NCBI RefSeq assembly: GCF_001194135.2
Contig: NC_069001.1
Coordinates: 14,296,349 to 14,329,163, forward strand
DNA from: Octopus bimaculoides
Lineage: Eukaryota
Length of the DNA stretch: 32,815 nucleotides
Direction: 5' to 3'
Part shown: positions 30,470 through 31,960 of the stretch, piece by piece
How positions within the stretch are numbered: the first letter of the stretch is position 1
Layout: each line of letters opens with the position of its first letter
The notes under the pieces: model-generated
What the model was told of the DNA's origin: nothing
Seen by the model: the letters and a program-made list of their open reading frames with translations, nothing else
Database searches by the model: none
Position numbers and translations under genes: made by a program

Positions 30470-31960
30470 GGAGGGGAATGTGTACGTGGTCACTAAATTT
30501 GCTAGAAATAGCAGTCAAGTCTCTATGAAACATCCTACCGCTTAAATGAAGGACATATGGAAGATGCCTTGTTCTTGATAAAAAGAAATATGACGAGAGG
30601 GCCACTGTTGGGACGTCTTTGATGTGAGCAGACTTGAAACTAATCCTCCGCGGCAACAGAGATTGTGGTTTAGTGGCAGTTCCTCTCAAATTCGTATTCT
30701 GTTATTTTGCATAGAGAAGGGCTTATTACAGAAATGGTGACCTAATGTAGAAATGTACCGTAAAATAAATCGAAGAACTGGTTACGGTTAGGACGTCATT
30801 GTTCCAATTTTACGTTGGTTTAAACAGAAAAATAAGCGCCCGAAGATGGAGTCCCAAAGTGGTTGCCATGTCAACTAGAAATAGCAGCCAAATCTCTACC
30901 AAATTCACATTATGTTGTTATCAACAGGGAAGGACATTGTACGGAAGTGTAGACCTAATGTGGCAAAGTGCCTAAAAATAAACTGATTTGATGGGCAAGG
31001 TTGGAACGTCTTTGTTCATGAATCTAAGGCTGTTCTGTTTGAACCAACGTGAGATAAAGTAAAATAACAAAAGCGCCGCAAGAGGGAATCTCGATGTGGC
31101 TGCTATGTCAGCTAGAAATAATAGCTAAATCTCTGTCAAATTCACATTTTGTTGTTTTAAATAGCGAAGGATGGTACAATGCACCTGGAAATATATGAAC
31201 GAGATGGTCACGGCTGGGACATCTTTCGTTATATGTCTACTTGACCAGACTTTATACAACAATAAATAATTTTTCATTTGTTGCTGTTGTTGTTCTTGTT
31301 AAACCCTTGGTCAACCGTCAACATATGATTCAGAGGCTGTCCATCAGTGACATTCACTACTTTCTTTTATGCTCAACTACGGTCTCTCACATATCCTTCC
31401 CGCCATAAAGAGCTATAAGATGTAAAATGATGGAGTTTTAGTTATTATTTCTAGCATTTCTAGCGACCACTGAGAGGCACATTTCATTCGTTGATTTCAA
31501 AAATACGTTTGGTTATTATTGTTGTTGCTATTGTCGCTGTTGTTGTTGTGGATGATGCTATGTTTCCAACTGTGGCCATCATGACTTTTTAATATAGCTA
31601 TTCTCTTGCATTAACTTTATAGCAGTCACCTACGAGGAAAGTTTAGCTGTTATTTCTAGCAGCCTAAGGCGATTGCGTAAAACATCCCTCATTGTCACAT
31701 CCACCACAGTTGTTATTTATGTTATTGTTGTTATTTATTTAGCCCCTGGTAAACCGTGATTGAGCAAGAACTTCCAGTTGTGACCATCCTGTGTGCAGGG
31801 AACGTAAGTCTCCGGTATCCAACATGTCCTTCATTATCGTTTGAGAGAGATTTGGTTGTTGTTTCTCGTCGGTTGGGTTGCTGTTGTTGTTTAGACATGT
31901 GATCAAAGACACTTCAGCCATGACCATCCCATCTTTGTTCTTGTGTAAAAGAAAACTAAT
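30470..31960. repeat. Array of about 8 diverged family D units: four on plus (about 30470-31270), then four on minus (about 31280-31960)
   Basis: The CTAGAAATA motif lies at 30502, 30875 and 31112 on plus and at 31432-31454, 31639-31659 and 31847-31868 on minus. The GATGGTCAYGGCTG motif lies at 31203 on plus and at 31566, 31774 and 31915 on minus. Confidence 0.7.

What the first reader, a model, noticed from the sequence alone, without database searches (positions are those of the whole stretch)
30470..31960. Mirror-symmetric array: four forward and four reverse old copies of one ~200-bp repeat meeting tail-to-tail near 31275
Seen: the units share an ordered set of motifs (gaggg ... gtggt, CTAGAAATAGCAGCCAAATCTC, caaattcac, gaaggac, GATGGTCAYGGCTG, a CAA-rich tail). 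Units starting near 30470, 30660, 30850 and 31085 face right; units at about 31280, 31520, 31730 and 31880 face left. They are strongly diverged from each other with independent deletions, so this is not a recent satellite expansion. Only two other copies occur in the remaining 30 kb (12872 and 26725). Inference: possible origins are repeated self-targeted insertion, an old tandem array followed by inversion, or selective retention of clustered binding sites or a dsRNA-forming structure. The dsRNA option is relevant if this is a cephalopod with heavy ADAR editing.
Basis: partly seen in the sequence, partly recalled or inferred. Interest (0 to 1): 0.7.

Follow-up and report, generated by a model that had tools for sequence, protein, structure and literature searches.

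The report
Decayed SINE-like repeat cluster in octopus
This is a real but ordinary piece of old repetitive DNA in an octopus genome: eight decayed copies of one roughly 200-base mobile-element-like repeat, four facing right and four facing left, with no sign that the arrangement has a function.

Summary
A profile built from the units finds exactly ten copies in the window. Eight are contiguous at 30451-31964: four on the + strand, then four on the - strand, meeting tail-to-tail at about 31272-31277. Two are solo copies, at 12861-13073 (-) and 26691-26863 (+).

The window is octopus DNA. It shares SINE pieces at 88-92% identity with an Octopus bimaculoides chromosome.

The units look like short retroposons. 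They have a discrete 5' end, a (CAA)n or A-rich 3' tail, one 5'-truncated copy and solo copies. No tRNA, 7SL or 5S head was found, so membership of the SINE class is not established.

The tree of units is star-like. There are no mirror pairs, and the solo copies nest among the array units. The only supported clade is F2+F3+F4 (96% bootstrap), a later local tandem triplication. The fourth reverse unit runs into an assembly gap. The "4+4" symmetry is therefore partly coincidental.

The conserved motifs are shared by the solo copies, so they reflect constraint on the element, not on this locus. The inverted arms could fold back as RNA (z -3.3 for the whole array, -6.9 for the inner pair). The longest uninterrupted helices are only 19-23 bp, and no compensatory changes were seen.

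Verdict: an old repeat cluster of a known kind. Interest is low.

The parts
30451..30660 (+). Unit F1. Full length. Its head extends to about 30451 (ATATTTTCCGCAGAATCAACGGAGGGG). It carries the motif CTAGAAATAGCAGTCAAGTCTC and has a very short tail.
   Evidence: nhmmer E 1e-34; alignment
30645..30839 (+). Unit F2. The CTAGAAATAGCAG motif is deleted (about 27 nt). It shares a roughly 24-nt insertion with F3. Its segment 30807-30829 is inverted relative to the homologous segment of F3.
   Evidence: nhmmer E 1e-25; alignment; inverted match 20/23
30829..31078 (+). Unit F3. It is the copy closest to the consensus and carries the exact 22-nt motif.
   Evidence: nhmmer E 8e-47; motif with 0 mismatches
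31070..31277 (+). Unit F4 with its A/CAA-rich tail (ACAACAATAAATAA). F2+F3+F4 form the only supported clade, a later tandem triplication.
   Evidence: nhmmer E 6e-43; 96% bootstrap; blastn 30687-30934 against 30900-31171, 68% over 272 nt across the unit junctions
31262..31300 (.). Tail-to-tail junction: ACAACAATAAATAA / TTTTTCA / TTTGTTGCTGTTGTTGTT. The centre of symmetry is at about 31272-31277.
   Evidence: sequence; palindromic blastn hit 31096-31470
31278..31505 (-). Unit R1. Full length with a (CAA)n tail. It has a 9-bp tandem duplication inside the motif (31447-31464).
   Evidence: nhmmer E 5e-38; TRF
31506..31710 (-). Unit R2. It has a long (CAA/CAG/CAT)n tail of about 45 nt at 31506-31555.
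   Evidence: nhmmer E 8e-25; TRF (TTG)n 31519-31549
31714..31874 (-). Unit R3. It lacks about 50 nt of the 5' head and directly abuts the tail of R4.
   Evidence: nhmmer HMM positions 49-235, E 1e-23; alignment
31869..31964 (-). Unit R4. Only the 3' part and the tail are visible. The unit runs into the assembly gap.
   Evidence: nhmmer HMM positions 151-236, E 4e-12; N run
31965..31974 (.). Assembly gap of 10 N. The right end of the array is unknown.
12861..13073 (-). Solo copy S1. It is preceded on its 5' side by a roughly 45-nt (CAN)n tract at 13085-13130 and has no CAA tail.
   Evidence: nhmmer E 1e-34; sequence
26691..26863 (+). Solo copy S2. It has an internal deletion and ends in (CAA)3.
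   Evidence: nhmmer E 4e-24; sequence

Best explanation
The array is a decayed local cluster of an old short non-autonomous retroposon of about 200-240 bp. The element is SINE-like: it has a discrete 5' end, conserved internal blocks, and a simple-repeat (CAA)n or A-rich 3' tail. The host is an octopus genome.

Most units were laid down about when the family dispersed. Two convergent founder copies sat tail-to-tail, and further copies then integrated into or beside the simple-repeat tail of a resident copy. Target-primed reverse transcription primed on a (TTG)n strand gives a new copy in the same orientation, head-to-tail. Later, unequal crossing-over triplicated one unit into F2, F3 and F4.

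Since then everything has drifted neutrally. Deletions, a micro-inversion and tail slippage have accumulated. The conserved motifs are relics of what the active element needed, not of a function of this locus. The ability of the two arms to fold back as RNA is a by-product of the convergent orientation.

Shown: the units, their orientation and their age; the star-like tree; the F2-F4 triplication; the tails and the truncation; and the absence of locus-specific constraint.
Inferred: retroposition as the mode of spread, and integration at tails as the reason for clustering.
For: - Ten copies with a common 5' start and ordered motifs.
- Each reverse unit carries its own (CAA)n tail of different length. 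S2 ends in (CAA)3.
- R3 is 5'-truncated and joined directly to the tail of R4.
- Two solo copies show that single units disperse.
- S1 lies directly 3' of a (CAN)n tract, just as R1 lies 3' of the tail of R2.
- The tree is star-like, with the solo copies nested among the array units and no mirror pairs.
- F2+F3+F4 have 96% bootstrap support and homologous junctions.
- The motif block is 78% identical against 49% elsewhere, and the solo copies share it. That is what copies from constrained master elements look like; uniform in-situ decay would not give it.
- Octopus genomes are rich in SINEs, with hundreds of unclassified families, and in R4/Dong, CR1 and RTE LINEs (PMC13282606).
- SINEs have tails of simple repeats and can seed tandem arrays (PMC10702118).
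Against: - No pol III head was found. Rfam gave nothing at gathering score or at E up to 10, ARAGORN gave nothing, and there are no consistent A or B boxes.
- No convincing target-site duplications.
- No partner LINE is known.
- No other copy was found in 114 kb of sampled cephalopod DNA, of which only 11 kb is O. bimaculoides. Genome-wide dispersal is therefore unproven.
- Priming on tails explains the head-to-tail blocks but not why two blocks converge.
- The forward units have only degenerate A-rich tails.
- At JC 0.6-1.0 the tree has little power.
Confidence: 0.5

Rival explanations
1. A single founder unit was amplified in place by unequal crossing-over into a direct tandem array. One inversion then flipped the distal half, with breakpoints in or next to the simple-repeat tails. 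Alternatively, a very early fold-back inverted duplication did the same. The solo copies are orphan monomers or unrelated transpositions.
For: Tandem duplication did happen at this locus, in F2-F3-F4. A local inversion process is seen in the 23-bp micro-inversion of F2 relative to F3. Inverting half of a direct array yields tail-to-tail arms without mirror pairs, which fits the tree. The family was not seen elsewhere in the sampled DNA.
Against: Array units are no closer to each other than to the solo copies S1 and S2. Conservation along the unit is strongly uneven and the solo copies share the same pattern. Both inversion breakpoints would have to fall at unit boundaries. R3 looks like a 5'-truncated insertion. 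The flanks show no symmetry beyond microsatellites and one common SINE.
Confidence: 0.3
2. The whole 1.5-kb structure is the relic of a Foldback-type DNA transposon. Such elements have long inverted terminal arms built of tandem subrepeats.
For: The architecture matches: two inverted arms of tandem subrepeats that abut with only a spacer of about 8 nt.
Against: The arms are only about 55-61% alike, no better than any other pair of units. The units carry retroposon-like simple-repeat tails and occur singly elsewhere. The right end lies in an assembly gap, so terminal duplications cannot be checked. No second copy of the whole structure is known.
Confidence: 0.07
3. The convergent arrangement is kept by selection. 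It could be a source of fold-back dsRNA, acting as an ADAR substrate or a small-RNA hairpin locus, or it could be a cluster of protein-binding sites.
For: The predicted fold-back is more stable than controls. The native sequence folds at -425.9 kcal/mol, against -363.4 with the right arm flipped and -385 +/- 12 for shuffles (z -3.3). The inner pair F4+R1 gives z -6.9. One 22-nt motif is better kept than the rest of the unit.
Against: The longest uninterrupted helices are 19-23 bp. The arms are no more similar than non-partner units. The motif hairpin shows no compensatory change and RNAalifold finds no consensus structure. The conserved blocks are equally present in the solo copies. Editing prefers young repeats of low divergence (PMC9989829). 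There is no evidence of transcription.
Confidence: 0.03
4. The mirror structure is an assembly artefact of a gapped short-read draft.
For: The window has 14 N gaps, and one of them touches R4.
Against: All eight units lie in one uninterrupted contig piece, 29662-31964. The arms differ at about 40-45% of positions, so they cannot be a collapsed or chimeric duplicate.
Confidence: 0.02

Closest known systems
SINEs with simple-repeat tails, and SINE-derived tandem arrays (for example the sSat arrays of squamate reptiles, PMC10702118)
   Same: A unit of about 200 bp with a discrete 5' end and a simple-repeat 3' tail. Some copies are 5'-truncated. Solo copies coexist with head-to-tail clusters. Arrays grow by unequal recombination or by insertion at the same locus.
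   Different: No pol III-derived head could be recognised, and no partner LINE or target-site duplication is shown. The array is short (4+4 units), not homogenised, and split into two convergent blocks.
Non-LTR retroposons that integrate into the tails of earlier copies or into microsatellites (from my own knowledge, not tested here: Zepp of Chlorella; R4/Dong-type and other microsatellite-specific LINEs; Alu insertions into the A-tails of older Alus)
   Same: Head-to-tail clusters in which each unit directly follows the simple-repeat tail of the previous one. One solo copy directly follows a (CAN)n tract.
   Different: Target specificity is only inferred from one locus and one solo copy. Two opposite orientations occur at a single site, which tail priming alone does not predict.
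Inverted SINE pairs as dsRNA sources (inverted Alu pairs in primates; repeat-derived dsRNA across metazoans, PMC9989829)
   Same: Neighbouring copies of one short repeat in opposite orientation. The predicted fold-back is more stable than shuffled or flipped controls.
   Different: The copies are about 40-45% diverged, the helices are at most 23 bp, and no transcription or editing data exist for the locus. Known substrates are young repeats of low divergence.
Foldback (FB) transposons
   Same: Two inverted arms made of tandem subrepeats that abut each other.
   Different: The arms are not similar to each other beyond ordinary family-level homology. The subrepeats have retroposon-like tails and occur singly.

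Membership tests
SINE (non-autonomous non-LTR retroposon) | Discrete short unit (about 80-500 bp) with a common 5' end | tested here: met
   Seven of ten copies start within a few nt of the same HMM position. Units are about 195-250 bp.
SINE (non-autonomous non-LTR retroposon) | Head derived from a pol III RNA (tRNA, 7SL or 5S) with A and B boxes | tested here: not met
   Rfam gave no match at gathering score, and only a spurious CrcZ hit on the CAA repeats at E up to 10. ARAGORN gave none; with relaxed settings its hits fall at inconsistent positions. There is no consistent A or B box. The copies are very decayed, so the negative result is weak.
SINE (non-autonomous non-LTR retroposon) | 3' tail of simple repeats or A-rich sequence, variable in length | tested here: met
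   R1-R4 and S2 carry (CAA)n-type tails of about 10-45 nt. F1-F4 have degenerate A-rich tails.
SINE (non-autonomous non-LTR retroposon) | Dispersed copies flanked by target-site duplications | tested here: inconclusive
   Two solo copies exist in the window. No convincing duplication was found around them; the best candidate is a 6-nt match at S2.
SINE (non-autonomous non-LTR retroposon) | Many copies genome-wide, and a partner LINE sharing the 3' end | not testable with these tools
   No eukaryotic genome can be searched by DNA here. No copy was found in 114 kb of sampled cephalopod loci. The translated-unit search found nothing. Metagenome and GTDB scans gave only chance motif hits.
Satellite / SINE-derived satellite | Long head-to-tail arrays with homogenised monomers | tested here: not met
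   There are four units per arm at 39-67% identity. TRF finds no period of about 200 bp.
Foldback-type transposon | Inverted arms of tandem subrepeats that are closely similar to each other, with a flanking target-site duplication | tested here: not met
   The architecture is present, but the arms are about 55-61% alike with no mirror pairing. The right end lies in the N gap, so the duplication cannot be tested.
Hairpin dsRNA locus / ADAR substrate | Long, mostly uninterrupted intramolecular duplex | tested here: not met
   The longest helices are 19-23 bp. The fold-back is stabilised only modestly (z -3.3 for the whole array, -6.9 for the inner pair).
Hairpin dsRNA locus / ADAR substrate | Transcription, A-to-G editing clusters or small RNAs from the locus | not testable with these tools
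   No RNA data are available.

The most novel reading that the evidence does not exclude
The family is a site-specific retroposon of octopuses that integrates into (CAA)n tracts, including the tails of its own earlier copies. It would then build head-to-tail and convergent clusters genome-wide. Where transcribed, such clusters would give fold-back RNAs that feed the cephalopod editing or small-RNA machinery.
Probability: 0.12. Interest if true: 0.45.

Novelty: new member of a known kind. Interest (0 to 1): 0.15.

Why it matters
It matters little in itself. The result shows that a striking "mirror array" in an octopus scaffold is the expected debris of short retroposon activity, local tandem duplication and drift, not a designed structure.

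Its small value is as a worked example. The equal count of 4+4 arises from a later triplication on one side and an assembly gap on the other. Motif conservation that looks like retained binding sites is shared by solo copies, and so belongs to the element.

If a genome-wide census showed that the family regularly integrates into its own (CAA)n tails, it would add a tail- or microsatellite-targeting SINE/LINE system to the cephalopod repertoire.

Tried and rejected
1. Known RNA or tRNA origin of the unit head. Rfam at gathering score and at E up to 10 gave nothing real. ARAGORN gave nothing, even with relaxed settings on units and consensus. A/B-box scans gave nothing consistent.

2. Conserved hairpin CTGCTA-GAAA-TAGCAG in the main motif. 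RNAalifold predicts no consensus structure. The pair count shows 76% of cells paired but no compensatory change, no better than shuffles.

3. Mirror pairing of units. Pairwise identities, NJ bootstraps and exclusive shared derived states give no support for F4/R1, F3/R2, F2/R3 or F1/R4.

4. A palindrome extending beyond the array. Flank against flank gives only microsatellite matches and the 3' end of a common octopus SINE in opposite orientation (29740-29800 and 32335-32403). The unique flank sequence does not match.

5. Extra degenerate units in the flanks of the array and of the solo copies. None was found at E up to 100.

6. Finding other copies elsewhere:
- The exact motif in JGI metagenomes gave 0 hits. 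A degenerate motif gave 3 metagenome and 2 GTDB hits, which are chance matches limited to the motif.
- A concatenated six-frame translation of units and consensus, searched against 5.8 billion proteins in case spurious ORFs had been called over copies, found nothing at E up to 10.
- Six loci (114 kb without N) were fetched through relatives of the window's transposase pseudogene. One is O. bimaculoides and five come from two ENA assemblies of more distant species. They contain no copy.
- Two ORFs of the array are not on record, so the gap could not be bridged.

7. Assembly artefact. Rejected because the arms differ at about 40-45% of positions within one ungapped contig piece.

Full report
**What the window is.** The 32.8-kb window is a gapped draft scaffold. 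It has 14 N runs (3728 N), GC is 36%, and it is crowded with microsatellites. No convincing exon was seen among ORFs of 90 aa or more. The window carries a Tc1/mariner-type transposase pseudogene at about 22400-23210. The best named relative of that pseudogene is an Octopus bimaculoides protein. The window also shares short SINE pieces at 88-92% identity with the O. bimaculoides chromosome locus L001. It shares nothing but the transposase with five loci from two other ENA assemblies.

**Checking the observation.** An HMM built from them, run with nhmmer over the whole window, returns exactly ten hits and nothing else down to E = 50:
- Forward units: F1 30451-30660, F2 30645-30839, F3 30829-31078, F4 31070-31266.
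- Reverse units: R1 31278-31505, R2 31531-31710, R3 31714-31874, R4 31869-31938.
- Solo copies: S1 12861-13073 (-) and S2 26691-26863 (+).

The 22-nt motif occurs four times at 3 mismatches or fewer, against none in 100 shuffles. GATGGTCAYGGCTG occurs eight times against 2.7 expected. Eight of ten copies within 1.5 kb did not occur once in two million random placements. The two arms meet tail-to-tail at ACAACAATAAATAA-TTTTTCA-TTTGTTGCTGTTGTTGTT, about 31272-31277.

Three qualifications apply:
- F2 has lost the main motif.
- R3 lacks about 50 nt of its head.
- R4 is only a 3' part that runs into the 10-N gap at 31965-31974, so the right arm's true length is unknown.

**Anatomy of the unit.** Full units are about 195-250 bp. 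They begin near ATATTTT..G.AGAATCAACGGAGGG, a head shared by F1, R1 and S2. They carry the blocks GTGG, CTAGAAATAGCAGCCAAATCTC, CAAATTCAC, GAAGGA, GATGGTCACGGYTGGGACGTCTTTG and TTGACCAG. They end in a simple-repeat tail. Each reverse unit has its own (CAA)n-type tail of a different length (TRF (TTG)n at 31278-31300 and 31519-31549). S2 ends in (CAA)3. The forward units have degenerate A-rich tails.

R3 is joined at its truncated 5' end directly to the tail of R4. S1 is preceded by a roughly 45-nt (CAN)n tract that aligns with the "R2 tail + R1 head" junction.

This is the layout of a short non-LTR retroposon: head, body, and a tail of simple repeats (see PMC10702118). The defining pol III head could not be shown. 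Rfam found nothing real, ARAGORN found nothing, and A/B-box scans were inconsistent. I therefore call it SINE-like, not a SINE.

**Relationships among the units.** Pairwise identity is 39-67%, and JC distances are mostly 0.6-1.0. The NJ tree is star-like. The only supported split is F2+F3+F4 (96% of 500 bootstraps). None of the four mirror pairs is supported; F1/R4 reaches 19% and the others less. The solo copies fall among the array units. A count of exclusive shared derived states gives the same answer.

F2, F3 and F4 also share homologous junctions. blastn aligns 30687-30934 with 30900-31171 at 68% over 272 nt, across unit boundaries. F2 and F3 share a roughly 24-nt insertion. So one unit was triplicated locally and later than the rest: F3-F4 have JC 0.43, against 0.6-1.0 for most other pairs. 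Before that, the left arm had two units while the right arm had at least four. The "4+4" symmetry is therefore coincidental.

For a very rough age I used the octopus repeat calibration quoted in PMC13282606, where JC 0.09 from the consensus is about 25 My and 0.2 is about 56 My. On that scale the triplication is of the order of 60 My old and the rest about 100 My or more. The rest is close to saturation, so this is an inference, not a measurement.

**Is anything selected at this locus?** The main motif is 78% identical between copies, against 49% outside the conserved blocks. The same blocks are kept in S1 and S2, which lie 17 and 4 kb away from the array. Uneven conservation shared by dispersed copies is what copies of constrained master elements look like. 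It is not evidence for a function of the array.

The motif contains a perfect palindrome in the inferred ancestor (CTGCTA-GAAA-TAGCAG). RNAalifold finds no consensus structure, however, and the explicit pair count shows no compensatory change.

**The dsRNA idea.** Folded as RNA, F4+R1 gives -124.6 kcal/mol against -88.3 +/- 5.3 for shuffles (z -6.9). A 1-kb piece gives z -4.5. The whole array gives -425.9, against -385.4 +/- 12.1 for shuffles (z -3.3) and -363.4 when the right arm is flipped into direct orientation. So the convergent arrangement does add about 60 kcal/mol of fold-back pairing, mostly between F4 and R1 (122 of 478 pairs).

This is still only what any inverted pair of homologous repeats gives. 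The helices are short, the longest being 19, 21 and 23 bp. The arms are no more alike than non-partner units. Across metazoans, including O. bimaculoides, editing prefers young repeats of low divergence (PMC9989829). No expression data can be consulted here. I rate a selected dsRNA role at about 3%.

**How it most likely arose.** The best-supported account is as follows.
- A short retroposon family was active long ago.
- Two copies landed tail-to-tail.
- Further copies integrated at the simple-repeat tails of resident copies. Target-primed reverse transcription primed on a (TTG)n strand yields a same-orientation, head-to-tail neighbour.
- One unit was later triplicated by unequal crossing-over.
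- The whole cluster then decayed.

The evidence for this account is listed in the Best explanation section. In brief:
- The tails differ in length.
- R3 is 5'-truncated.
- Solo copies exist.
- S1 lies behind a (CAN)n tract.
- The tree is star-like and includes the solo copies.
- Conservation is uneven but family-wide.

Octopus genomes are known to hold hundreds of unclassified SINE families and abundant R4/Dong, CR1 and RTE LINEs (PMC13282606).

The main rival, at about 30%, is in-place tandem amplification of one founder followed by an inversion of the distal half. Tandem duplication demonstrably occurs here. A 23-bp segment of F2 is inverted relative to F3 (20/23), which shows that local inversion events occur as well. 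An inverted half-array would also lack mirror pairs. With the signal near saturation and no access to other copies, these two accounts cannot be separated here.

A Foldback-type transposon relic (about 7%) fits the shape. It does not fit the dissimilar arms, the retroposon-like tails or the solo units. An assembly artefact is excluded by the 40-45% divergence of the arms within one ungapped contig piece.

**What could not be done.** No tool here searches eukaryotic genomes by DNA. I tried four indirect routes to other copies:
- motif scans of metagenomes and GTDB;
- a translated-unit search, in case spurious ORFs had been called over copies;
- sampling 114 kb of cephalopod DNA through transposase relatives;
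- looking up ORFs of the array.

All failed. The family's copy number, its usual context, its target-site duplications and its partner LINE therefore remain unknown. The decisive-next-steps field lists the analyses that would settle them.

**Verdict.** What it shows is an old SINE-like repeat cluster with a later local triplication, in non-coding, microsatellite-rich octopus DNA. It is a new, or at least here unnamed, member of a well-known kind of sequence. Nothing points to a function. Interest is low (0.15).

Noticed in passing
window 22400-23210 (+): Tc1/mariner-type (DDE_3) transposase pseudogene with frameshifts and stop codons. It is 77-78% identical in DNA to the O. bimaculoides LOC128250757 locus (L001) and 73-75% identical to copies in two ENA assemblies.
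   Followed up: partly
window 30807-30829 and 31033-31055: A 23-nt segment near the 3' end of F2 is the reverse complement (20/23) of the homologous segment of F3. F3 has the orientation seen in the other units. This is a micro-inversion that arose after the F2/F3 duplication. Shuffled sequence reaches 20/23 in 1 of 20 trials, so significance rests on the homologous position.
   Followed up: partly
window 31447-31464: A perfect 9-bp tandem duplication (ATTTCTAGC x2) lies inside the conserved motif of unit R1.
   Followed up: no
window 13085-13130 (- strand): A tract of about 45 nt of (CAN)n lies directly 5' of solo copy S1. It aligns with the "R2 tail + R1 head" junction. This hints that the unit integrates next to CAA-like tracts, or that an upstream unit was lost.
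   Followed up: partly
window 9986-10097, 16787-16832, 28000-28104; also 29740-29800 (+) and 32335-32403 (-): Pieces of a common octopus SINE, 88-92% identical to L001 11289-11403. One copy lies on each side of the array, in opposite orientations. That pair gave a spurious impression that the palindrome extends into the flanks.
   Followed up: partly
window 32150-32215: A short inverted repeat, tttcggcttgct ... agcaagccgaaa, in the unique sequence just right of the array. It may be the end of another element.
   Followed up: no
whole window: Fourteen N runs totalling 3728 N (11% of the window), most of them next to AT/TG microsatellites. Repeat content near the gaps is under-represented, and the right end of the array is lost in one of them.
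   Followed up: yes
L009 3796-3864 and L010 7435-7503: A Woesearchaeota MAG contig and a metagenome contig carry an identical stretch of about 70 nt containing CTAGAAATAGTAACTAAATCTC. It was picked up by the degenerate motif scan. I judged it a chance match selected by the scan, not a relative.
   Followed up: partly
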